DNA of 64,000 nt from Magallana gigas (taxonomy: Eukaryota). The stretch spans positions 48,484,001 through 48,548,000 of the forward strand of contig NC_088855.1 of assembly GCF_963853765.1 (NCBI RefSeq), written 5' to 3'. Positions within the stretch are counted from its first letter, which is position 1; every line of letters begins with the position of its first letter. Shown piece by piece: positions 13,884 to 56,891 of the stretch. The translations under genes were made by a program, and so were the position numbers. The notes beneath the pieces are model-generated. The model worked only from the letters and a program-made list of their open reading frames with translations. It was not told where the DNA came from and ran no database searches.

Positions 13884-13935
13884 ATGACTCAAAGAAGTTA
13901 CGCTGATCACGGATACGCCTGGGTTATACTAGGAG
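13884..13935 (+). CDS. Alternative first coding exon 1a of the SLC16 transporter (MTQRSYADHGYAWVILG)
   Basis: 52 bp from ATG to a phase-1 G|GTAGCT donor. It encodes the SLC16 N-terminal D-x-G-(W/Y)-x-W motif and is frame-compatible with exon 20369. Confidence 0.7.
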
Positions 13936-14546
13936 GTAGCTATATCTTGATTTATATCTATATTATTATAAATCTCAGCGATTCCACGAATATTGATTAT
14001 TTGTGTGCTCTGTCATTTGTTAGGACATTTGCATTTAATTAAAGGCCTTGCCTTTGTGTCAACATGAAACCTTTTTAAAAATAACTTCGGACTTTCCCCC
14101 AGACGATCGTATATTACCTTCGTACTTCCTTTTTCTAAAAATGACTTAGTTAGCGAATGTATGGTGAACAGTTCAACTATTAATTTAAGTAAAGAAATAT
14201 ATGTCTAACGTTACAGACAATTTTCTTAGTTAAATCTCTTTAAGTTAAAAAGACAATTCTCTAAGTTAGAAAGATATCTTTGTAAGTCAAAGAGACATTT
14301 CGAATTCTTTTAATTTAGAGGATGTCCCATAAGTTAGATTGGCATTTCTTTAAGTTATAGTAGAATAAAGAGACCGAAATTATTAATTGGGAGGAATACA
14401 GAGATCGAAGCTACAGTATATCATTTATATTGAGATGTATCTTTCAATTCTGATTAAATTGTGCACTTTCCTGTAATGAAGGTTGGTAGAAGTTTATCTT
14501 GCGGTCTTCAGATGAATCCATTGCAATGTGCAAGAAGGGATGGCAC

Positions 14547-14548
14547 AG

Positions 14549-14631
<83 letters not shown>

Positions 14632-14632
14632 T
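14547..14632. repeat. (GATA)n microsatellite, about 21 units
   Basis: Directly visible, with one GATA>AATA interruption. Confidence 0.97.
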
Positions 14633-15020
14633 TTTTTATTTCAAAATTAGGACCCTTTCAGGCATTACGAATAACAAGCACGATTGATACATGTACAATA
14701 ACAAAAGCACAAACATAATTATGATTGTATATAATATTCTGCATGTTTTTTTTTGTTTATGAAAGGTTGGAAAGTTCAAAACTAAATGCCATTTCTGAAC
14801 ATTTTACCCAGCTGTCATGATGTAACTTTTGAATTTACCGGGTGGCAGTGAATACAAAATTTACAACATTACACATGTATTTGTTAAAAATTTACATCAT
14901 GACACGGCTCTCCAGATGTATAGTATACTTGTAATGTGGGGGTCACACAATGTGACTTTTCCTCTTACTAAACTAAAATCGAACTGTATAACCACCGTAA
15001 AAGTTGGTGAGTTACTTTAA

Positions 15021-15793
15021 AGGGGATGTGCGGCCATCTTGTACATTTGAGGATAAGAGGGTATCCTATTTTTATCAGTCGGCATGGGATCTATTTTAGA
15101 AAAAGAAAAATGCAGTCTACACTTAGAACTCCTGTATCTATGGAGACACATTAACGTTTTATTTTCATGGAAAAAAAAATAAATGTCAAATCAAATCAAT
15201 CCGCGTTGAATTTGATATATACCTCTATACCTGTCCCATGTTTGCTTATAAAAGTTTTTCTTAGTTCTATAAGTATAAATTATAGTAAATTCTTTTTAGA
15301 GTGGGGTAGGGGTCCAAAAAGTGATTGTCTTAGCTTCAAAAAGTATACATTATATTTCAATGAAAATATATCTTCAATGTACCTCCATAGACACAGACAA
15401 AAATATCTTGTGGGAATTGATAGCTTTTGAAGCCAATTTTAAGAATAGGGTACCCGACTTTGAGAGAAAGTTACAACTTGAATAAGCAAGCTTAGACCTT
15501 TTCTCAACAAATGGTTGTAGAGCGGACACCAATAAACCTTCCTATTTTTCCAGATTTTTAAATCTTCAAAAAATCTTTAGCTGCACAGTTCGACAGCTGT
15601 TCTAAGGGATTAAAAAAGCATTGTCATATGTTCTTGTATGCATACTTTCTAAACAAAATGACATGTAGGACTTCATATTTATTGCTTTTGTATCTTTTGG
15701 AAACAGTTTTGGCAAGTTTTGGGCAGAAACTAGGCAGTTCAAGAACTGTTTACATTCTTATCCTCAAATGTACAAGATGGCTGAATATCCCCC
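15021..15793. mobile_element. 773-bp Kolobok-type non-autonomous DNA transposon
   Basis: TTAA at 15017-15020 and 15794-15797. 37-bp TIR AGGGGATGTGCGGCCATCTTGTACATTTGAGGATAAG matches the reverse complement of the right end at 33/37. Purine-purine termini with a TTAA TSD define Kolobok rather than piggyBac (which starts CC). Confidence 0.82.
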
Positions 15794-16997
15794 TTAATAT
15801 CGCCCAAGTCGAACAGAAATCGATTGCAAGATGTGGCCACATTTAGAGGCAAGTTATATCGCGATTTTTTTTTTTTTTAGAGGATAGTGAGTTGGTACGC
15901 TTCAGATGTGACTTAAAAACAACACGAAAAAAGTATGAACTACCTGGGGTTTGATTTGAATTAGGGTTACACAAACAAATACACTACACATATGAAAGCG
16001 CAGATGCATGTGAATGATGGAAAAATACTACTAGTATATTGTATGTCTTGGAGATATAATTGAAGATTAACCATATTTTATGAGAAAATAAAAAACCCTG
16101 TGTGATGTAATGCCAAAGTGTACCCAGGTGGACACAAACGTGTGAGTGTGCTGGTCCCAACACTGACGATGGCTGACAGACACTTGACTTGTTATAAAAC
16201 AGGACCACAATCACACACTCCTCCTCGTGTGTCCCGCGGCTTTTAATTATTCATGTTAAAGATTATTCAAAAACACGATTTATTTTTAAATCCCTAATAA
16301 AATCAAAATTTACAGAATATCGGACAGTGGAGTTTGTCAGGTAAGCTTCTAAAATAAATCAGATAAAATAAAACTCAGAAATGAAATACTCTTGGATGAT
16401 ATGCATGCAGGTAGTGTAATAATTGGAACGTTTTATTACGGCTGTGTAGCTCCCAGTAGATAGCAGTCCTCGAGTGCATAGATTAATTAACCAAGGAATT
16501 GTTACCCTAATGAAATGAAGAAGTTTATTACGTAATATATCATAAATGTATGGAACGCCACATTTGTCTTATGTGGTTATTTCATTAGAAGATTGTGCTT
16601 TATTATATAAAGATGGTGCTTCATTAATAAAAATAAATAATAAAAAGTAAGAAAAATTAACTAAATTATTCTTAATGTAAATCAGTGCGTTAGATAAAAG
16701 AAACAACCAAATGGTCTTCTATAGGAATTTGATTCTAACATCAGCATGATTATTTCTAGCTGCAACCTCTCCCGGTTTTTTTTCTCCAGTAAACATCAGA
16801 CATAAAAAAATCGGAGAGGGCTTCAGTATTGCATCTAGATTATTTTGTACAGCTATGATTGTACATTCAATTTCCGTAAGAACGCCTGATAGATGTGAAT
16901 ATATTTCAATGAATTGTTAAAGTGTCATGTTTTATCAACATGCACGTGTTTACTGTTATAAGTCACTGATTCCCCTTAATTTAAAGTGATAATTTCA

Positions 16998-18116
16998 ATT
17001 GTTATACTTTCATGTTAAATACTGAAATCTGATTGGTTAAGACGCAGTTAATAATATTTACTATTACCCTCAGCGTTAGCAACGCACTTGGCAACGGGTA
17101 ACATTATATAAATAGTGCCTGTTTGGGAGGGTAACAGTTGAAATTGACACCCCGAGAAAACCATTGTCAACCGACGCGAAGCGGAGGTTGACAATGGTTT
17201 TCGAGGGGTGTCAATTTCAACTGTTATCCTCCCAAACAGGCACTATTTATTTTGTTATACTGAATGTCTTTTTAAAAATTTTTAAGAAAATTTTACTGCT
17301 TTTATATAGGAATAACGTGAATTCTACAGCGAACCGTACGCGCATAATTTTCGCGCATGTAACATTTTTTAATGTTACCCGTTGCCAAGTGCGTTGCTAA
17401 CGCTGAGGGTAATAGTAAATATTATTAACTGCGTCTTAACCAATCAGATTTCAGTATTTAACATGAAAGTATAACAATATATAAATAGTGCCTGTTTGGG
17501 AGGGTAACAGTTGAAATTGACACCCCGAGAAAACCATTGTCAACCGACGCGAAGCGGAGGTTGACAATGGTTTTCGAGGGGTGTCAATTTCAACTGTTAT
17601 CCTCCCAAACAGGCACTATTTATTTTGTTATACTGAATGTCTTGTTAAAAATTTTTAAGAAAATTTTACTGCTTTTATATAGGAATAACGTGAATTCTAC
17701 AGCGAACCGTACGCGCATAATTTTCGCGCATGTAACATTTTTTAATGTTACCCGTTGCCAAGTGCGTTGCTAACGCTGAGGGTAATAGTAAATATTATTA
17801 ACTGCGTCTTAACCAATCAGATTTCAGTATTTAACATGAAAGTATAACAATAAAAAATGTTACATGCGCGAAAATTATGCGCGTACGGTTCGCTGTAGAA
17901 TTCACGTTATTCCTATATAAAAGCAGTAAAATTTTCTTAAAAATTTTTAACAAGACATTCAGTATAACAAAATAAATAGTGCCTGTTTGGGAGGATAACA
18001 GTTGAAATTGACACCCCTCGAAAACCATTGTCAACCTCCGCTTCGCGTCGGTTGACAATGGTTTTCTCGGGGTGTCAATTTCAACTGTTACCCTCCCAAA
18101 CAGGCACTATTTATAT
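16998..18116. mobile_element. Composite of three near-identical copies of a 373-bp non-coding element with a 143-bp terminal hairpin (two forward copies nested in one inverted copy)
   Basis: Segments a(16998-17105) - B(17108-17250) - C(17251-17370) - a'(17371-17478) - B(17481-17623) - C(17624-17743) - a'(17744-17851) - C'(17852-17971) - B'(17972-18114). B has 65-bp arms (62/65 paired) around a GCGAAGC loop. Confidence 0.88.
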
Positions 18117-18606
18117 AGTGGCATTTTTAAATCATGTATGGGGAAAGAAGTCGTCGAGCGGATAAGGCGATATCAATTGATAAAATAGTAAATTGTCAGA
18201 CTGAACTTATGACCTTAGCTGGCAAAAATAGAATTCTTAATGTCTTTTCTAACCACAAACTATTATTTAGTAGAGAAAAATTCGAGTATTATATTTATTT
18301 TCTTGTTGAGCAGTTCGGAAGTTACTATAGAAATCGATATATCATTTTCATCGTTGAATTACATTTATTGCTACAAAAAAGGAAGTCTGTCAAGCTAGAG
18401 ATATTTTTATGAATATTGATACCACCTGTAACCACGGATATTGCTCAAAATCGTTGTCGATGGATTAGTGTAAAATATACATACCGATATACGTATATGT
18501 ACTATTTATAATATCTATATATTTTTGTGTTGCGTGAACTCCTGTTCGACCATTGTTTTCTTTAAAATTCACAAGTCATGACACCTTTTGCTTGGTCTGG
18601 CAGAAT

Positions 18607-21600
18607 ATGGTTGCCATTCTTGATGTAGACAGAGGATACGCTTGGGTGATTTTGGGAGGTAACACAGTCCTTTTTAGTCCTCTGTTCGATTATCTTTATA
18701 TAAAAAATGACATCCCTATCACCATCACCCACCAACATACTTACGTGTCATTCTCTCTCTGCGTTTTCTCCCATGTATTACACACCGGTATATTGGTATA
18801 ATGATGTGTATCTATATTATCCCTAAAAATATATGAAATTGATACATGTACCTCATAAATTATGTCTGTTACTGCTACCTATATCAGTTTTGTACTGCAT
18901 TTATTACTGGATTCAAGTGAAACAAGAGGCCTACAGGTCTTATCGCTCACATGGGGGTTAATCCAATTACACCTTAATTCAAAGTAGCTCAACACACTTG
19001 AAATAGTTTCTCAAATCAGCAGAAAAATACTTGATTATGATAGATAACATGTAGCAGAAGAAATATACAAGTAAAAAACAGCAAAAGAAATACGCAGTTT
19101 TGGATTTTAAACAAAAATTTAATTCAGTAAATTTAAACAAAACCCTCAGACGGATTCGAATTGCTGACCTGCGAATTACAAGCCTGATACTATAACCACT
19201 GATCCATGATGATATTAAACCAAATCAATGGATACAACAATTCAACAAAACATTGCCATCATGTGACGCTGTGTCTTAAAAAAGTATGTCTTGATGTCTT
19301 GGGCTACCTTAAAGTCCTTTTATTTAGGAATGCTTTTTGGTTGACCATGTGATTCTTGAAAAAAGTCACAAACTGACAGACGTTAGTTAACATGTGATCA
19401 GAAAAACTGATTGAATTTTCAGCTCAGGTGAGCTATAAAGGGTCGGGTTAAAAAAATAATAACGAGATTGATAAAAACTAATAGTGTATCTATTATTTGT
19501 AATCTTTGTATCACAGTATCTTCATGTAACTCGCAGTGACTTGTAATACTGCTAACTTGTTCCCTACTGTAATTGGGACAGATATAGACTATATATTCAT
19601 GTTATCTAACTCTGCTTACTTCCTTACAAGTACAATACGCATGCGTTGTCGTTTGACTTGTTGTTTAAGCATGAAAATACACAGAACAAAAACGCCTTTT
19701 ATAGATTTTCTTTTGACCAAAATTATTTATATCTAAACAATAGAATGCTTTCTTTGGTAATTCATGCGGGAATGAAGGTAGCGACATTGCAGAAATAATA
19801 CATAACCCACGTTGACTAGCAGGTTATGTATTTTTTCTCAAATGATCGCTACCTTCATATTTTGCATGAATAATCAAAGACAGCATTTTATTGCATTTAT
19901 TGTAATAAACTATTGAATTAATCAAAAGTAGAAGGTAAAAGTAAGTGGATTGTTGTTCATGTACATCGGAACGCTGGATAAAAGAAATAGCAAAACCTTC
20001 GTATATGAGAATTTGAGTTTGGCATCATCAAGTTTTATTTTTGGTACAGTCCGTGATTTTTCTTACGTTGCTGAAGGTTTCGACCAATTGATAAACGATC
20101 GTGTAGATTTTAGCCCTGTCAGTTTCTATAGAGCTGTGAATTACAATCGGTTTTCTCTTGAAATGTAGGGAAAAAATACACAGGGGATGTAAAAATTCAT
20201 ATGTATACATAGTCTTCACTTCCTAACTCCTTAATCTCAGTAAATGTATGTTTTCATCTGTCTATCAATGTTCTAACTTACCTAAATGAAAGTCTTACCC
20301 TATTCTTTTTTTCAATCACTACCATGACTATGCACTTCCATGTTACGGCTGTTATTTTGTTTTTCCAGCTTGCTTCTTTATGTACATGCTGTTGCTGGGT
20401 TCCATCAAGTCTTTTGGAATCTTGTACTCGGAGATTTTGCTGACGACTGACAATGGAGCGGGGAGCACCGCACTGATCGGGAGTTCCGCCGGCTTCATCC
20501 AGTCACTGACCGGTAATAGAGCGCCGTAACTACTTAACTCCATCCCATGTTATTGTTCCCAGCAATTTTCACGATTTTTAAGAAGTACAATTGGAAGCGA
20601 TGAGAGAGATAAAATACAAGATTTCTTAATTGACACTTCTTTTATCTTTACCCGGATAAGTCCACACGAACAAACAAAAATTTCTTTAGGAGATTTATAA
20701 TGGGAAAAACTGACATCTTTTATCATTCGAAAGTCACTTGGATCACTTCACACAATTTTTCAACGTTATCATCCGGGTACTTTCATGGCAATGCAAATTC
20801 CTATTAGCTGATACACTCTAGGGGGGGGGGGGTTAAAGGGACTTGGACACGATTTGAGATCAAAAAAAATTATTTTTATTTTTTATGTATAAACTGGTTT
20901 ACTGGTGAATTTAAATGATTAATCAAAATATTGAATGTTAAAGTCAAGTTACAAACGAGATACAGAGGTAAGAATTGATTGTTATGTAAACAAAGCTCGA
21001 GTCTTATAGTTGTTTACAAAAAAATGAAATGTAGAGAATTACCATTTCTTTGACAAAATGACATGTAAACAACAATTCAAACTAACTCAATATCTCATAA
21101 ATACTATTATCAATAAAAGAAAGTTACATTTAATTGAAACTTACGCCAATACAACACATATGTAAAAAATGACAATATTCGAGTTTTGTTTACAAAACAA
21201 AGAATTATGAACTCCGTATCTTGCCTATAACTTGACATTTGGCTTTCAAATTTTGACATGATATTATAAACTTCTATATTTATCAATATAAACATTGAAA
21301 AGGGAAAAATAAATTTTGAAAATTTAAAGTCAAATCGTGTCTAAGTCCCTTTAAAGGGTCAAAAATTGTTTTTTCGATTTTAATGTTTACAATGCTTTAG
21401 TAAGGCATTTGGCCAAAATTTGAGTGTCATTTGATGAGTCGTAAGCGAGTTACAGAGCTTACAATTTTTCGCTGTGTAAACAAAGCGTTTGTTTACATTT
21501 TGAATGTTGAAGTGAAAATTCCAGTTTAAGACCTAAAATGAATGTGTTAATCGTTAGGAACTGTCATTTATGCTTAAAATGGATAATAAGATAGACAAAC

Positions 21601-23822
21601 CAGCTTTAAAAAGATTTTGTACTGGTATATTAAACCTATGAAAACAAAAACAGGGCACAAGCCTTGTTTACATGACGAAGAATTGTAAGCCCTGTATCTT
21701 GCTTAAAACTCAACGACTGGCAACCAAATTTCATTTGATCATTAGAAATGCATTGCAAGTAATAAAAACAGAAAAATAAAATTTGACCAAAATCGTGACC
21801 ATGCCACTTTAAAAGGGGGAAATCATGCATAAATATTCTGTGACAGAGTACAGTACAATCAATACCAATCTTTGCAAGCCAAAGATTCGGGTCCTTTCAT
21901 AGAGAAATTACAATATATATTCATGTTTGTGTACATGAAGGAGCATGTATCTTTTATGTATTTGGAAACCTAATTATAACTTTATATTCTGGATACTTTA
22001 CTTGTAGGTCCGTTTTCTATATTCCTGGCTGTTCGGTTCTCTTTCCGTTCGGTATGTCTCCTGGGCGGCGTGTTTCTGTGCCTGGGATACGTGACCAGTG
22101 CCCTCATCCACAATGTCTTGTACTGGTACCTGACGTACAGCGTCATCGCAGGTGAGCTTAAAGGCCCCCCAGACTCTATCGGTTACTGCTCAAAATATCT
22201 TTTATTAAACTTTTGTTTAAATTTATATCATTTTATGGCAGGATTCGGTTATGGCTTGGCATACGTCCCTTGCACTACACTGATCAACTACTACTTTGAG
22301 CGGAATCGAGCACTGGCCAATGGCATCGTTCTCTCAGCAAGCGGCGTAGGCGGCTTCCTGTTCCCACATATCTATCGGTTCCTTCTAGACCGCTACGCAC
22401 TTAGTGGTGCTATGATAATTCTTGGTGGTGTCATGTTGAATATTTGTGTGGCAGCTTCGTTTTTAAGACAACCACTTGAGTTCACTGGGTCTCAAAGTTC
22501 AACAAACAAGACAGGAAAATCACAAGAAGTTCCCAAGACTTGCAGAGAGCTTGTCTTTCGGAAGTTTTGTGTTTGTGGTAGCGATGTCTTAAGAGACCTG
22601 CGTTTCCTCTTCATTTCGATGGCCTTTTGCTTGACCGCTCTGAGCTATTCGGCCTATTTTTACACTTTCCCATCGTTTCTTGAATCGGAAAATGTCGGAA
22701 AATCCACCACTGTCTTCATCTTTTCGTTGACGGGTGTGTGCGAGATTTTTGCCAGGGTAGCCATGGGATGGTTCACAGATCTGAGGATTCTTTCGCCCAC
22801 GTGTATTTACGGAATCTGCATGGTCGTCAGTGGTGTTGCTACGCTAGCTGTACCTCTGCTCCATCAAACAACCATATACTATATCTACGCAGTAATAGTA
22901 GGAATATTCCCAGGGTCATTTTATGCATTGATGTCTGTGATAATACTGGAGACCATTGCTCTCAAGAATCTGCCGTCAGCATTTGCTATCATCACAATAT
23001 TCATTGCTGTCTTTTCCTTACTTGGAATACCTTGTCTAGGTAAGTAAATCAGGCATATTCGAGGAACACTCGGGTGCTTTTCTCTCGCTCTCCCTATGCC
23101 ATCCCCTACCCCCCCCCCTCTCTCTCTCTCTCTCGTGATTTCATAGACCTATGGATTTTAAAATTTTAAAGATGGTTTTAGTATCAGTGTATTTAAGGAA
23201 TATGGAATCATTCTTTGAGTATTTTGAGGTGATAATTTCGGGCTTTATTGGATATGACCACACTCCGACCGAAATTATCACCTCATAATATCCAAAGAAT
23301 GATTCCTAATTACTTATAATAATATTATTTCCAATTTGTATACTTTAAAACAACATTATTTTAAAACCACTATTTTTTTTAATGTAGCACATACTATGTA
23401 TTACAACGCGGCGCAGCCAATACCGCTTTGCGGTTATGCTGTAAGACACGCCCATTTTGTGTCAATCATGTTTTGTGAAGTTATTGGGTTTTAGGGTTCA
23501 AAATGGATTCGTAATGTTATCACAGGCAAAGACAGTTGAACATGTAAATATTTCAGTTTAAAAGTGTTTCGAAGCATGCCGAATTTTGTAGTCTGCTCAC
23601 CATTTCTTTACTTTAGGTTGGATTGAGGATTTGACGAAGAGCTGGGACAACGTGTTTTTCATCACAGGAGTTTTGCAATTATTGGCTGCCATGGTAGCAT
23701 TCTCTGTTTCCAGGTGTTTTGACACGAATACCAGTGACAATGACATAGTGATAGAACAGGGCAAGGCTGAGGCAGCAGACGATAAACTCTTGGGTGGAGA
23801 AAAAGAGGCAGGAATCGAATGA
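18607..23822 (+). CDS. SLC16/monocarboxylate transporter family member (MFS, about 12 TM), 447 aa
   Basis: Exons 18607-18658 (1b, MVAILDVDRGYAWVILG), 20369-20512, 22008-22151, 22242-23039 and 23617-23822 (stop TGA). All GT-AG with consistent phases. Motifs DRGYAWV, GSIKSFG and GFGYGLAY...YYFERNRALANG are SLC16 signatures. The exact orthologue cannot be assigned. Confidence 0.9.
18921..19437 (+). mobile_element. Old degenerate Helentron/HINE copy
   Basis: 5' motif AACAAGAGGCCTACAGG..TCGCTCAC at 18921. The 3' motif GTGATCAGAAAAACT...GCTCAGGTGAGCTA at 19394-19435 is homologous to the HINE end at 1712-1756. Confidence 0.6.
18982..19308 (-). mobile_element. Degenerate TTAA-type element with a tRNA-like module, nested in the HINE
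   Basis: Right end GGGCTACC|TTAA (19301-19312); left end degenerate (GTAGCTC). On the minus strand, A-box-like TGGATCAGTGG and B-box-like AATTCGAATCC lie at 19152-19206. Confidence 0.4.
19737..19893. mobile_element. Degenerate long-hairpin repeat element
   Basis: Arms GAATGCT..CTTTG..ATTCATGC..ATGAAGGTAGCGA..ATACATAACC and GGTTATGTAT..TCGCTACCTTCAT..GCATGAAT..CAAAG..AGCATT are reverse complements around a loop of about 14 nt. Confidence 0.65.
20581..20800 (+). repeat. Internal fragment homologous to the mariner-like element at 37402-37877
   Basis: Shared blocks such as GGAGATTTATAATGGGAAA and CACAATTTTTCAAC(G/A)TTATCATCCGGG are collinear with 37471-37695. Confidence 0.7.
20837..21350 (+). 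mobile_element. 514-bp Kolobok-type element, family 1
   Basis: TTAA at 20833-20836 and 21351-21354. TIR AGGGACTTGGACACGATTT versus AAATCGTGTCTAAGTCCCT (18/19). An inverted paralog lies at 30371-30979. Confidence 0.88.
21355..21808 (+). mobile_element. Kolobok-type element, family 2, abutting family 1 and sharing its TTAA; left TIR internally deleted
   Basis: Starts TTAA|AGGGTCAAAAATTG and ends TTTGACCAAAATCGTGACCATGCCACT|TTAA (21809-21812). The paralog at 42792 shows the full TIR AGGGGCGTGGTCACGATTTTGGTCAAAA. Confidence 0.82.
23194..23316. mobile_element. Long-hairpin repeat element in the last SLC16 intron
   Basis: GGAATCATTCTTTGAGTATTTTGAGGTGATAATTTCGG (23204-23241) pairs with CCGAAATTATCACCTCATAATATCCAAAGAATGATTCC (23269-23306). 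Confidence 0.75.
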
Positions 23823-25039
23823 AAAGAGCTTGAAGTTTAGGATTACTTGTACTATGTATCATAGTACTTCTACTATGAGACTTTAATAGGTGATGCGAAG
23901 TAGGCGATATCAGCAATGAATTCGTGTGTAAAACACAACTGTTATTCAATAGCATGTTGTTTAAGACACAACAACGAAATATTCATGAAATAAAATTCCA
24001 TTTATACCATTGCTTTATTTTTATGCTAAATTATCTCAATACACCCCCCCACACCCTTCCAAAAAAAAAAAAAGATCGAGAATCGGGGGTATTCTTTTCT
24101 AGTATAGCCTTATGTATGTTTGCCAAAAGTTCATAATTTTCTATATTACTTTTGAACCTTTTCAGGTGAACCCTTCCAGTTTGGAACACGTACGCATTTA
24201 ACTGTTATTAATTATAACCTTTAATTTCAACGAACATTTGCCCATTGGCTTGTCCATGATTAATGTTACACAAATGTATACTTGGGTTGAATGAACAATA
24301 ATCTTACGAGCTCCCTTGGTAAGAAATACTTGTATTGTCTAATATGGAGTAGAGGGTTAAATTTCCGTTCCAACTGGCTCACATAATCGATGTTGCCCAA
24401 AACAAATTCAATATTCGTTTTAATTAAAGAAGAATTTAAAACAAATTGCCACTATTTTGCTCTTTTCTGCCAAAAATAAATTCCTTTGGCCGCACAACTT
24501 CGGTGAATTGGCATGTACGAAACTCTAGACTGAACAACTGAATTCATTGGCGTGAAAAAGTTGGCCATATTTATTCATCTCTATGTGCACCGAAAGCTCG
24601 TAAAATCAAAATATGATCATTGATCTTGATCACATCACTGCTTGGTAGAATTGGGAGGATCTGTGTGAAACATATACATCTTTTTCCGTATAAGACGGAA
24701 ATTAATTAACTAAAATGTTTATTGGTGTAAACTTGTCACATAATACAGAATGTATAAACATATGCAGCAAAACTAGAAAGCACATAACACGTGACTGAAT
24801 CCAAAATGAGAATAGTGTATTAAAGTGAATGTTAAATATTGTAGTAATGGGATTGACCCTTTCTAGTATATACAGTTATATACCTACAGCTTTTAATATT
24901 AGCTGTAACATTAAATTTCGTTCCACTATAAATTTTAGACTTGTTAAAATTTATCTTGACCAGCAACCGATACTTCACATTGGCCTGACCATTAAGCATT
25001 CAGTTTGGTGAAGTAAGGACCTGTAATAACTTAGATACA

Positions 25040-44253: not shown

Positions 44254-55790
<11,537 letters not shown>

Positions 55791-56891
55791 CATTAAAATA
55801 ACTTCATAGTCATACCAAGTATTCCCAGCATCTGACATGGTGTATATTGTGAACAAGTGATATCATAGATGTGGAAGATTCAAAAGTTTGCCAGTGATGT
55901 GTTTTGATGCATTAGTTTGTAGAAGCTGTACAACAGGTCCTTGATGTTGAGTGCAATATTCTCTGTATGTAGTACATAGGGACTATTTAGGCAACCAATA
56001 ATTTTCAGATTTAATCATTTTCAAACAAATCTTACCGAACGCTTTACTGAACAGGATTTGTTGAATTTTAGTTAATTTTAAAAAATAATGATCAATGATT
56101 AATGAAAACTTATTGATCATCGCATGGCAGATTTTTGGAGAAGCCTTAGCTAAATCAATCATTAATTCCAAGGGACCTGTGAAATGTTATATCATTTTAT
56201 GAGATGTAAATTTTCTGTGATTTTAAGTTGTCAAGTATGTATGTATATATATATATTGAATTTAAGTTTAAAGTGCTTCAAATGCAGTTCATGCAGTGTT
56301 TTTGTTATTCATAAAATGAGGTCAAAATAGTAATTGTTACTAGATATAAATTTTGAATTGGCTTGATCATTAGAGCATGTTGTTTTTATTTTCATTTGTC
56401 ACATGGTTAATGATTAAATTAATGAATGTGTGGTATTTTGCACTAATCTTTCAAACCTCATATTGACATTTGATTTCAAGGAAGTTTTGAATTTGTAGAT
56501 AAGACAAATCATCAAATACGCTTTACTTTAAAGCATAGAAATTATTTATTTATAGCTATTTAAGAAAAATGTACTATAGACTAGCTTTTAATTGTTGCAC
56601 ATACTCAAATATATCACTGAAAGGAAACTACAATAGTGTATGAAGTTCCATAGCCAACTATATATATAGTTCATTTGAATTCAATGTTGTATAAAAGGAC
56701 ATTTGTAGAGGTTCACTTGAATATGTGACTGTGTGTTGTTGGTTTTCAGACTCTGCTATTAAGGTTCCAGCTAGTGAGCATTTCGACAATATTGTTGTCT
56801 ATTCTGTGGTCTAGATTGTTATCCGATGCTGTGATGACATTGGATTTTATCTATCAGTAGTAATGTACAAGTGTATTACACAAAGAACAAG

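What the first reader, a model, noticed from the sequence alone, without database searches (positions are those of the whole stretch)
13884..18658. Two duplicated, mutually exclusive first coding exons in the SLC16 transporter
Seen: exon 1a (13884-13935, MTQRSYADHGYAWVILG) and exon 1b (18607-18658, MVAILDVDRGYAWVILG) are 4.7 kb apart. Both are exactly 52 bp with phase-1 donors and share GYAWVILG but differ in the first 9 residues. Only one copy of exon 2 (20369) exists. Strong unused donors at 13557 (CAG|GTAAAA) and 16341 (CAG|GTAAGC) could be separate 5'UTR exons. Inference: an exon-plus-promoter duplication gives two transporter isoforms with different cytosolic N-termini and tissue or stress regulation.
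Basis: partly seen in the sequence, partly recalled or inferred. Interest (0 to 1): 0.7.

Follow-up and report, generated by a model that had tools for sequence, protein, structure and literature searches.

The report
Two alternative start exons, oyster transporter
An oyster monocarboxylate-transporter gene carries two anciently duplicated versions of its first coding exon; one is used in every transcript sampled and the other is unseen in RNA here but clearly kept by selection, which is an ordinary way for a gene to make two N-terminal variants.

Summary
Two 52-nt ATG-to-donor segments (13884-13935 and 18607-18658) both end in GYAWVILG plus a phase-1 GT donor, and the window has one copy of exons 2-5.

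Exon 1a is real and dominant. All 12 spliced transcript contigs fetched run colinearly from 13474-13737 to 13935 and then join 20369. All nine full-length proteins listed for the cluster start with exon 1a.

Exon 1b was not seen spliced in this species. It still looks functional:
- The same distal and proximal exon pair exists in Crassostrea virginica, Saccostrea cucullata and S. echinata.
- NCBI isoform models use both exons in both Saccostrea species.
- Against the C. virginica copy, the last 10 codons of 1b differ at 6 synonymous and 0 non-synonymous positions (p=1e-5).

Exon 1b is an internal exon with a conserved AG acceptor, not a first exon. A non-coding block (16216-16291) conserved in four species, followed in each by an AG|GTAAG donor (16340|16341 here), is its likely leader exon. 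Nothing but 28 nt of coding sequence is shared between 1a and 1b, so a promoter duplication is not supported. The site at 13556|13557 lies inside the 1a leader and is unused. Tissue or stress regulation is untested.

This is a new member of a known kind, of modest interest.

The parts
13474..13935 (+). Exon 1a, a true first exon: an approximately 410-nt leader plus the coding tail
   Evidence: 12 spliced Logan transcript contigs are colinear from 13474-13737 to 13935 and then join 20369. Their 5' ends cluster at 13474-13562.
13884..13935 (+). Coding part of exon 1a (MTQRSYADHGYAWVILG, phase-1 donor GAG|GTAGCT)
   Evidence: The C. virginica isoform X2 starts at the equivalent ATG (MAPTRHYADQGYAWAILA).
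13848..13850 (+). In-frame upstream ATG giving the 459-aa ORF (MHAHRQVHFIVN-); this extension is not conserved
   Evidence: The C. virginica sequence upstream of the conserved ATG is unrelated.
13554..13562 (+). Donor-like CAG|GTAAAA inside the exon 1a leader, unused in the sampled transcripts
   Evidence: Every contig fetched that reaches this site reads straight through it.
16216..16340 (+). Candidate non-coding leader exon and core promoter for exon 1b. The conserved block is 16216-16291 and the strong donor CAG|GTAAGC lies at 16340|16341.
   Evidence: This is the only alignable non-coding segment of the 1a-to-exon 2 intron against C. virginica (83% over 64 nt). The block is shared by 4 species, each with an AG|GTAAG donor 45-60 nt downstream. 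Its use in RNA is not shown.
18604..18658 (+). Exon 1b, an internal cassette: acceptor GGCAG|AAT at 18603|18604, ATG at 18607, MVAILDVDRGYAWVILG, donor GAG|GTAACA
   Evidence: The acceptor AG is conserved in 5 species. Against C. virginica the last 10 codons show 6 synonymous and 0 non-synonymous changes. The exon is intact in a related oyster contig, L007.
20369..20512 (+). Exon 2 (common)
22008..22151 (+). Exon 3
22242..23039 (+). Exon 4
   Evidence: The 22151>22242 joint appears in RNA reads.
23617..24315 (+). Exon 5: the CDS ends with TGA at 23820-23822, and the 3' UTR reaches about 24315
   Evidence: The 23039>23617 joint appears in RNA reads.

Best explanation
This is a five-coding-exon SLC16/MCT-family transporter gene with two homologous, anciently duplicated alternative N-terminal coding exons. 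The arrangement predates the split of Crassostrea-type and Saccostrea oysters.

Shown: promoter 1 (transcript 5' ends at about 13.47-13.56 kb) drives exon 1a. Its donor at 13935 splices directly to exon 2 and skips exon 1b. This is the only form seen in the RNA sampled.

Inferred: exon 1b is an internal cassette with its own acceptor at 18603|18604. It supplies the first AUG, in a good context (A at -3, G at +4), to transcripts that begin at a separate, non-homologous leader exon. That leader ends at 16340 and lies behind a conserved core-promoter-like block. The product would differ only in the nine cytosolic residues before TM1.

Shown by reading the frame: if 1a and 1b are both included, the 1a frame stops at 18621-18623. 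Productive mRNAs therefore carry one exon or the other.

The main consequence is probably two separately regulated promoters for one transporter core. The N-terminal difference is likely secondary.
For: Exon 1a use:
- 12 of 12 spliced contigs from 12 runs carry it.
- All nine full-length proteins listed for the cluster start with 1a. Together they stand for about 140 contigs.

Ancient conserved pair:
- Distal and proximal exons are both present in C. virginica, S. cucullata and S. echinata in the same order. The distal exon lies about 2-2.5 kb from the virilizer gene in the window and in S. echinata.
- NCBI isoforms start with either exon in both Saccostrea species.

Coding constraint on 1b:
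- 6 synonymous and 0 non-synonymous changes against C. virginica, Fisher p=1.2e-5.
- 5 synonymous and 1 non-synonymous against S. echinata, p=8e-4.
- ATG, acceptor and donor are intact in another oyster, L007.

Acceptor: the AG is conserved in 5 species. The S. cucullata X1 and X2 proteins show upstream exons spliced into it.

Leader: a four-species conserved block, each with a consensus donor, and only one ATG (16253) before the donor.

Age: within the window, 1a and 1b are saturated at synonymous sites (pS 0.95). The duplication is old, with no recent gene conversion.
Against: - No 18658>20369 or 16340>18604 junction was seen in this species.
- None of the 12 contigs and none of the 15 listed cluster members has the 1b start. 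40 of the 296 cluster members were read.
- No 48-152-aa protein fragment with 1b spliced to exon 2 is in the protein collection. The only hit is an unspliced genomic ORF from a relative.
- In two RNA contig sets the 1b region is colinear with the genome across the donor. In two polyA raw-read samples sense depth on 1b is about 0, while exons 2-5 bins show depth about 2-4.
- That test was weak. Depth was low, and the contig runs were chosen by genomic words.
- In C. virginica the proximal exon has a GC donor and is not used in the annotated isoforms.
- Transcript support for the Saccostrea Gnomon models was not checked here.
Confidence: 0.65

Rival explanations
1. Exon 1b is an unused relic in this species. 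Only exon 1a makes protein, and 1b merely persists from an ancestral two-exon state that is still active in Saccostrea.
For: No spliced 1b form appears in 12 contigs, in the 15 listed cluster members, in the fragment search or in 4 laid runs. The C. virginica copy has a GC donor and no annotated isoform.
Against: The substitution pattern against C. virginica is 6 synonymous and 0 non-synonymous, with saturated synonymous sites. This is not expected of a neutral relic. ATG, acceptor and donor are intact here and in L007. The upstream leader-like block is conserved too.
Confidence: 0.17
2. A single promoter makes both forms. Transcripts from the 1a promoter reach exon 1b by alternative splicing (13556>18604, skipping the 1a ATG, or 13935>18604). 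No second promoter exists.
For: A CAG|GTAAAA site lies in the 1a leader. An S. cucullata model joins the distal exon to the proximal exon.
Against: All contigs that cover 13556 read through it. The 13935>18604 form puts a stop at 18621-18623. The conserved block plus conserved donor at 16.2-16.34 kb is better explained as a separate leader exon.
Confidence: 0.1
3. Exon 1b acts as a non-coding regulatory (poison) cassette. Its inclusion in promoter-1 transcripts introduces a premature stop and down-regulates the transporter.
For: Joint inclusion does create a stop at 18621-18623.
Against: A poison exon needs no conserved ATG-GYAWVILG reading frame. The purely synonymous divergence shows selection on the encoded peptide. 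Saccostrea isoforms start translation in this exon.
Confidence: 0.05

Closest known systems
Tandem exon duplication with alternative or mutually exclusive use (general phenomenon described by Kondrashov & Koonin 2001 and Letunic, Copley & Bork 2002; recalled, not read here)
   Same: Two adjacent homologous exons of equal coding length and phase, with one per productive mRNA. Including both breaks the frame.
   Different: The duplicated unit is the initiator-codon exon. One copy is a true first exon and the other is an internal cassette behind its own leader. Exclusivity therefore follows mainly from promoter choice, not from a dedicated splicing switch.
Variable first exons with individual promoters joined to constant exons (UGT1A, clustered protocadherins; recalled)
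   Same: Alternative 5' coding exons, each spliced to one shared exon 2 onward.
   Different: There are only two variants and each encodes just 17 residues. The variable part is a short cytosolic tip, not a functional domain.
Alternative non-coding 5' exons and promoters of mammalian SLC16A7/MCT2 and SLC16A1 (recalled; one search found no paper on coding first-exon duplicates in SLC16)
   Same: The same transporter family, with multiple promoters and leader exons driving one transporter core.
   Different: In mammals the alternative exons are non-coding. Here each alternative carries its own ATG and the start of TM1.
NCBI 'monocarboxylate transporter 12-like' isoforms of Saccostrea cucullata, S. 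echinata and Crassostrea virginica (XP_062568095-8, XP_061189835/6, XP_022340790, XP_078337699-701)
   Same: Orthologous locus with the same neighbours (virilizer upstream, malectin downstream) and the same distal and proximal exon pair.
   Different: In Saccostrea both exon types are in annotated isoforms. In C. virginica and in this window's species only the distal type is seen.

Membership tests
SLC16 / monocarboxylate transporter family (MFS) | Major-facilitator fold domain over the whole protein | tested here: met
   Pfam MFS_1 scores 108.7 bits against a cut-off of 33.4, covering residues 32-306.
SLC16 / monocarboxylate transporter family (MFS) | Closest solved relatives are MCTs, aligned end to end | tested here: met
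   Human MCT2 at E=8e-37 over query residues 20-418, followed by MCT1, MCT8 and MCT10.
SLC16 / monocarboxylate transporter family (MFS) | N-terminal signature [D/E]G[G/S][W/F][G/A]W opening TM1 | tested here: inconclusive
   DHGYAW (1a) and DRGYAW (1b) align to DGGWGW of MCT2. The position and the D, G and W residues are kept, but Y replaces W and A replaces G.
SLC16 / monocarboxylate transporter family (MFS) | TM1 lysine and TM8 acidic/arginine pair of the proton-coupled MCTs (recalled from the MCT1-4 literature) | tested here: inconclusive
   In the MCT2 alignment K aligns with K (siKsf / fpKav). TM8 reads cEifaR against vDmfaR, so E replaces D and R is kept. Substrate and coupling cannot be derived from this.
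Mutually exclusive tandem-duplicated exons | Homologous neighbouring exons of the same length and phase | tested here: met
   The coding parts are 52 nt each and both are phase 1. They share GYAWVILG, with 23 of 28 nt identical at the 3' end.
Mutually exclusive tandem-duplicated exons | Each mature mRNA contains exactly one of the two | tested here: inconclusive
   1a-only mRNAs are shown. 1b-only mRNAs are not seen in this species. Joint inclusion gives a stop at 18621-18623. An S. cucullata model contains both exons.
Alternative first exons with their own promoters | Each alternative exon begins a transcript | tested here: not met
   Exon 1a does, with contig 5' ends at 13474-13562. Exon 1b has a conserved upstream AG acceptor, and in S. 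cucullata it is preceded by other exons. The alternative first exon would be the leader ending at 16340, whose use is not shown.
Exon-plus-promoter duplication | Sequence similarity extending from the exon into upstream promoter DNA | tested here: not met
   blastn of +-1 kb around the two exons finds only the 28-nt coding match.

The most novel reading that the evidence does not exclude
The 1b isoform is a conditionally expressed form, limited to a stage, a tissue or a stress. It would be driven by a promoter conserved across at least two oyster genera, whose invariant core holds two inverted CGTG-containing motifs (CCTCGTGTGTC ... AACACGATT, 16221-16285). One transporter core would then be wired to a constitutive promoter and to an inducible one, each with its own start exon. 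The proximal exon would be the ancestral start, and the distal copy a later capture next to the virilizer gene.
Probability: 0.2. Interest if true: 0.45.

Novelty: new member of a known kind. Interest (0 to 1): 0.3.

Why it matters
The result gives a corrected gene model for an oyster SLC16 transporter:
- a long, uATG-rich exon 1a leader;
- an unannotated but selectively maintained alternative start exon;
- a candidate second promoter.

It shows that the two-start architecture is old in oysters, being shared by Crassostrea-type and Saccostrea species. MCT genes have been raised in bivalve work on salinity, heat and ammonia tolerance (titles found, e.g. PMC11939762). A promoter switch in one of them is therefore a concrete, testable regulatory hypothesis. 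It does not reveal a new mechanism.

Tried and rejected
- **Partial gene duplication relic.** Rejected. tblastn of the full protein finds no second copy of exons 2-5 anywhere in the window.
- **Chance ORF.** Rejected on motif identity and cross-species conservation.
- **13556|13557 as a leader-exon donor.** Rejected for the sampled RNA.
- **Conserved 16.2-kb block as a small RNA gene.** No Rfam match in 13000-24500 apart from three sub-threshold hits elsewhere.
- **Direct read evidence.** The single read-laying run (18200-24199) showed the exon 3>4 and 4>5 joints. No 18658>20369 joint was among the 15 joints printed (56 not shown), and sense depth on 1b was about zero. Depth was too low to exclude a minor isoform. 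The 0.64 word share of the runs is explained by the SNP at 18612 (T>G), not by an exon boundary.
- **Search for short 1b-exon 2 protein fragments.** One search returned only an unspliced genomic ORF of a related oyster (L007).
- **Exact look-ups of Saccostrea isoforms X2 and X3.** These failed because only the longest product is indexed. They were solved through cluster members.
- **L007.** It is too close (88-94% identity everywhere) to show local constraint.
- **Outgroup bivalves.** Not examined. The best non-oyster hit is only 39% identical, so orthology would be doubtful.
- **O. edulis.** Only one start exon lies within the 10 kb fetched upstream. A distal exon further away cannot be excluded.
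Full report
**Observation**

The two segments are exactly as described.
- 13884-13935 encodes MTQRSYADHGYAWVILG and ends G|GTAGCT.
- 18607-18658 encodes MVAILDVDRGYAWVILG and ends G|GTAACA.
- Both are 52 nt from ATG to donor and both leave phase 1. Exon 2 starts at 20369 behind a strong acceptor.

Nucleotide similarity is confined to the last 28 nt (23/28). One-kb flanks share nothing. A search with the full protein finds exons 2-5 only once in the window, so this is a duplication of the start exon alone.

There are three small corrections.
- The cited donor-like sites are at 13556|13557 and 16340|16341.
- An in-frame ATG at 13848 lengthens the exon 1a ORF to 459 aa.
- The transcribed exon 1a is far longer than 52 nt.

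**Gene model**

From the sequence and the spliced contigs, the model is:

| Exon | Coordinates | Note |
|---|---|---|
| 1a | about 13474-13935 | first exon, long leader |
| 2 | 20369-20512 | |
| 3 | 22008-22151 | |
| 4 | 22242-23039 | |
| 5 | 23617 onward | stop at 23820-23822, 3' UTR to about 24315 |

The product is 447 aa from the conserved ATG. It is a bona fide SLC16 relative: Pfam MFS_1 scores 108.7 bits, and the best solved relative is human MCT2 at E=8e-37, aligned from DHGYAW onto DGGWGW. Both start exons therefore end inside the family's TM1 signature.

**Exon 1a is used**

A search with exon 4 found a 296-member cluster of Logan-derived proteins that are 98% identical to the window. 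All nine full-length members listed begin with exon 1a joined to exon 2 (...MTQRSYADHGYAWVILGACFF). Together they stand for about 140 contigs.

Twelve contigs from 12 runs were fetched and mapped. Every one is colinear from 13474-13737 to 13935 and then joins 20369, 22008, 22242 and 23617. Every contig that reaches 13556|13557 reads through that site, so it is not a leader-exon donor in the sampled RNA.

The 12-codon extension from 13848 is not conserved in C. virginica, whose isoform X2 starts at the ATG equivalent to 13884.

**Exon 1b in RNA**

Exon 1b was not found spliced.
- No listed cluster member starts with it.
- A search for 48-152-aa fragments returned only an unspliced genomic ORF from a related oyster.
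- Runs that hold the 1b words hold them as genomic-type contigs crossing the donor (X2 18480-18694, X1 18522-18763). Their 0.64 word share is explained by the SNP at 18612.
- In two polyA raw-read samples the bins holding exons 2-5 have sense depth about 2-4, while 1b has about 0. The few reads over 1b in X23 lie in the opposite orientation.

This is weak negative evidence. Depth was low, only 15 of 71 joints were printed, and the contig runs were selected by genomic words.

**Comparative evidence**

Cluster look-ups gave named orthologues and their loci were fetched. The neighbours are shared across species: a virilizer gene lies upstream in C. virginica and S. echinata, and a malectin gene lies downstream in all four loci.

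| Species | Distal start exon | Proximal start exon |
|---|---|---|
| C. virginica | MAPTRHYADQGYAWAILA | MDAERGVDRGYAWVILG (GC donor) |
| S. cucullata | MAKLDVDRGYAWVILG | MGVRPVIDGGYAWVILG |
| S. echinata | MTKVDVDRGYAWVILA | MGVRPDIDRGYAWVILG |
| O. edulis | none within the 10 kb fetched | one exon, 1 kb before exon 2 |

In both Saccostrea species, NCBI isoforms start with either exon.

The window's 1b aligns to the proximal exons. The distal exon lies 2-2.5 kb from virilizer exons in the window and in S. echinata. The pair is therefore older than the split between Crassostrea-type and Saccostrea oysters.

**Selection**

Over the last 10 codons, 1b differs from the C. virginica proximal exon by 6 synonymous and 0 non-synonymous changes (pS 0.86, Fisher p=1.2e-5). 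It differs from S. echinata by 5 synonymous and 1 non-synonymous change (p=8e-4).

Within the window, 1a against 1b is saturated at synonymous sites (pS 0.95). This indicates an old duplication without recent conversion. The pattern argues that 1b is translated in the Crassostrea-type lineage even though it was not seen in the sampled RNA. ATG, acceptor and donor are also intact in a second related oyster, L007.

**How 1b is reached**

An AG lies 3-6 nt upstream of the proximal ATG in all five species. The S. cucullata X1 and X2 proteins carry residues from upstream exons spliced into that acceptor. One of these exons lies at L003 21554. The other is the distal exon itself, read in a shifted frame. 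So 1b is an internal exon, and exclusivity is not absolute in Saccostrea.

In the window, joining 13935 to 18604 puts a stop at 18621-18623.

The only alignable non-coding piece of the 1a-to-exon 2 intron against C. virginica is 16220-16283. Its core (CCTCGTGTGTC ... CACGATT) is shared by four species, and each has an AG|GTAAG donor 45-60 nt downstream. I read this as a conserved leader exon and core promoter feeding exon 1b. That reading is an inference and no RNA shows it. Rfam gives no RNA family there.

**Verdict**

- There are two homologous alternative start exons, and both are maintained by selection.
- 1a is the major form.
- Use of 1b in this species is inferred, not shown.
- No promoter duplication is visible.
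- Regulation by tissue or stress is untested.

The kind is well known: tandem exon duplication combined with alternative 5' exons. I found no report of it for SLC16. Interest is modest.

An exact look-up of the joined exon 1b isoform, or of a junction-spanning pattern, was left out.

Noticed in passing
window 16998-18116: The hairpin-rich repeated element (373-nt tandem copies plus 276-nt inverted arms) sits in the intron between the candidate leader and exon 1b. A related oyster's genomic contig (L007) runs from 16997 straight to 18113 without it, so it is a lineage-specific insertion.
   Followed up: partly
window 13474-13883: The exon 1a leader holds 8 upstream ATGs (13484, 13514, 13549, 13566, 13640, 13643, 13656, 13834). 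It also holds an in-frame ATG at 13848 and an out-of-frame ATG at 13852. Some alleles turn GTG 13821 into a further in-frame ATG (468-aa proteins P0018 and P0020). Translation of the major isoform may be uORF-limited.
   Followed up: no
window 18480-18955: RNA-run contigs cover this stretch colinearly (depth 7-10 in X2), while neighbouring intron bins are empty. In the stranded polyA run X23 the few reads over 18600-18799 lie in the orientation opposite to the gene's exons. This may be an unspliced or antisense transcript over exon 1b.
   Followed up: no
L005 15336-15362 (C. virginica); P0032, P0029: The C. virginica proximal start exon has a GC rather than a GT donor. C. virginica X3 and S. 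cucullata X4 isoform models start at MYMLLLG inside exon 2. These would lack the start of TM1.
   Followed up: no
L003 3191-3241 and 25730-25790 (S. cucullata): Isoform X2 (MPGSFLE-LTMGVRP...) is a model that joins the distal exon to the proximal exon. It uses an ATG in a shifted frame of the distal exon.
   Followed up: partly
window 23194-23316: A 48-nt inverted repeat lies in intron 4, with sub-threshold miRNA-family matches (mir-1891, 26.8 bits against a gathering score of 70) and very high read depth. It is most likely a dispersed repeat rather than a miRNA.
   Followed up: no
window 8235-11441 (-), 34845-35096 (-), 45500-55800 (+): The neighbours are virilizer-like exons upstream on the minus strand (conserved against C. 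virginica and S. echinata), a ribosomal protein P2-like exon, and the clathrin heavy chain gene.
   Followed up: no
window 19356-19522: About 167 nt present in the window are absent from the related oyster contig L007. This is an intronic indel.
   Followed up: no
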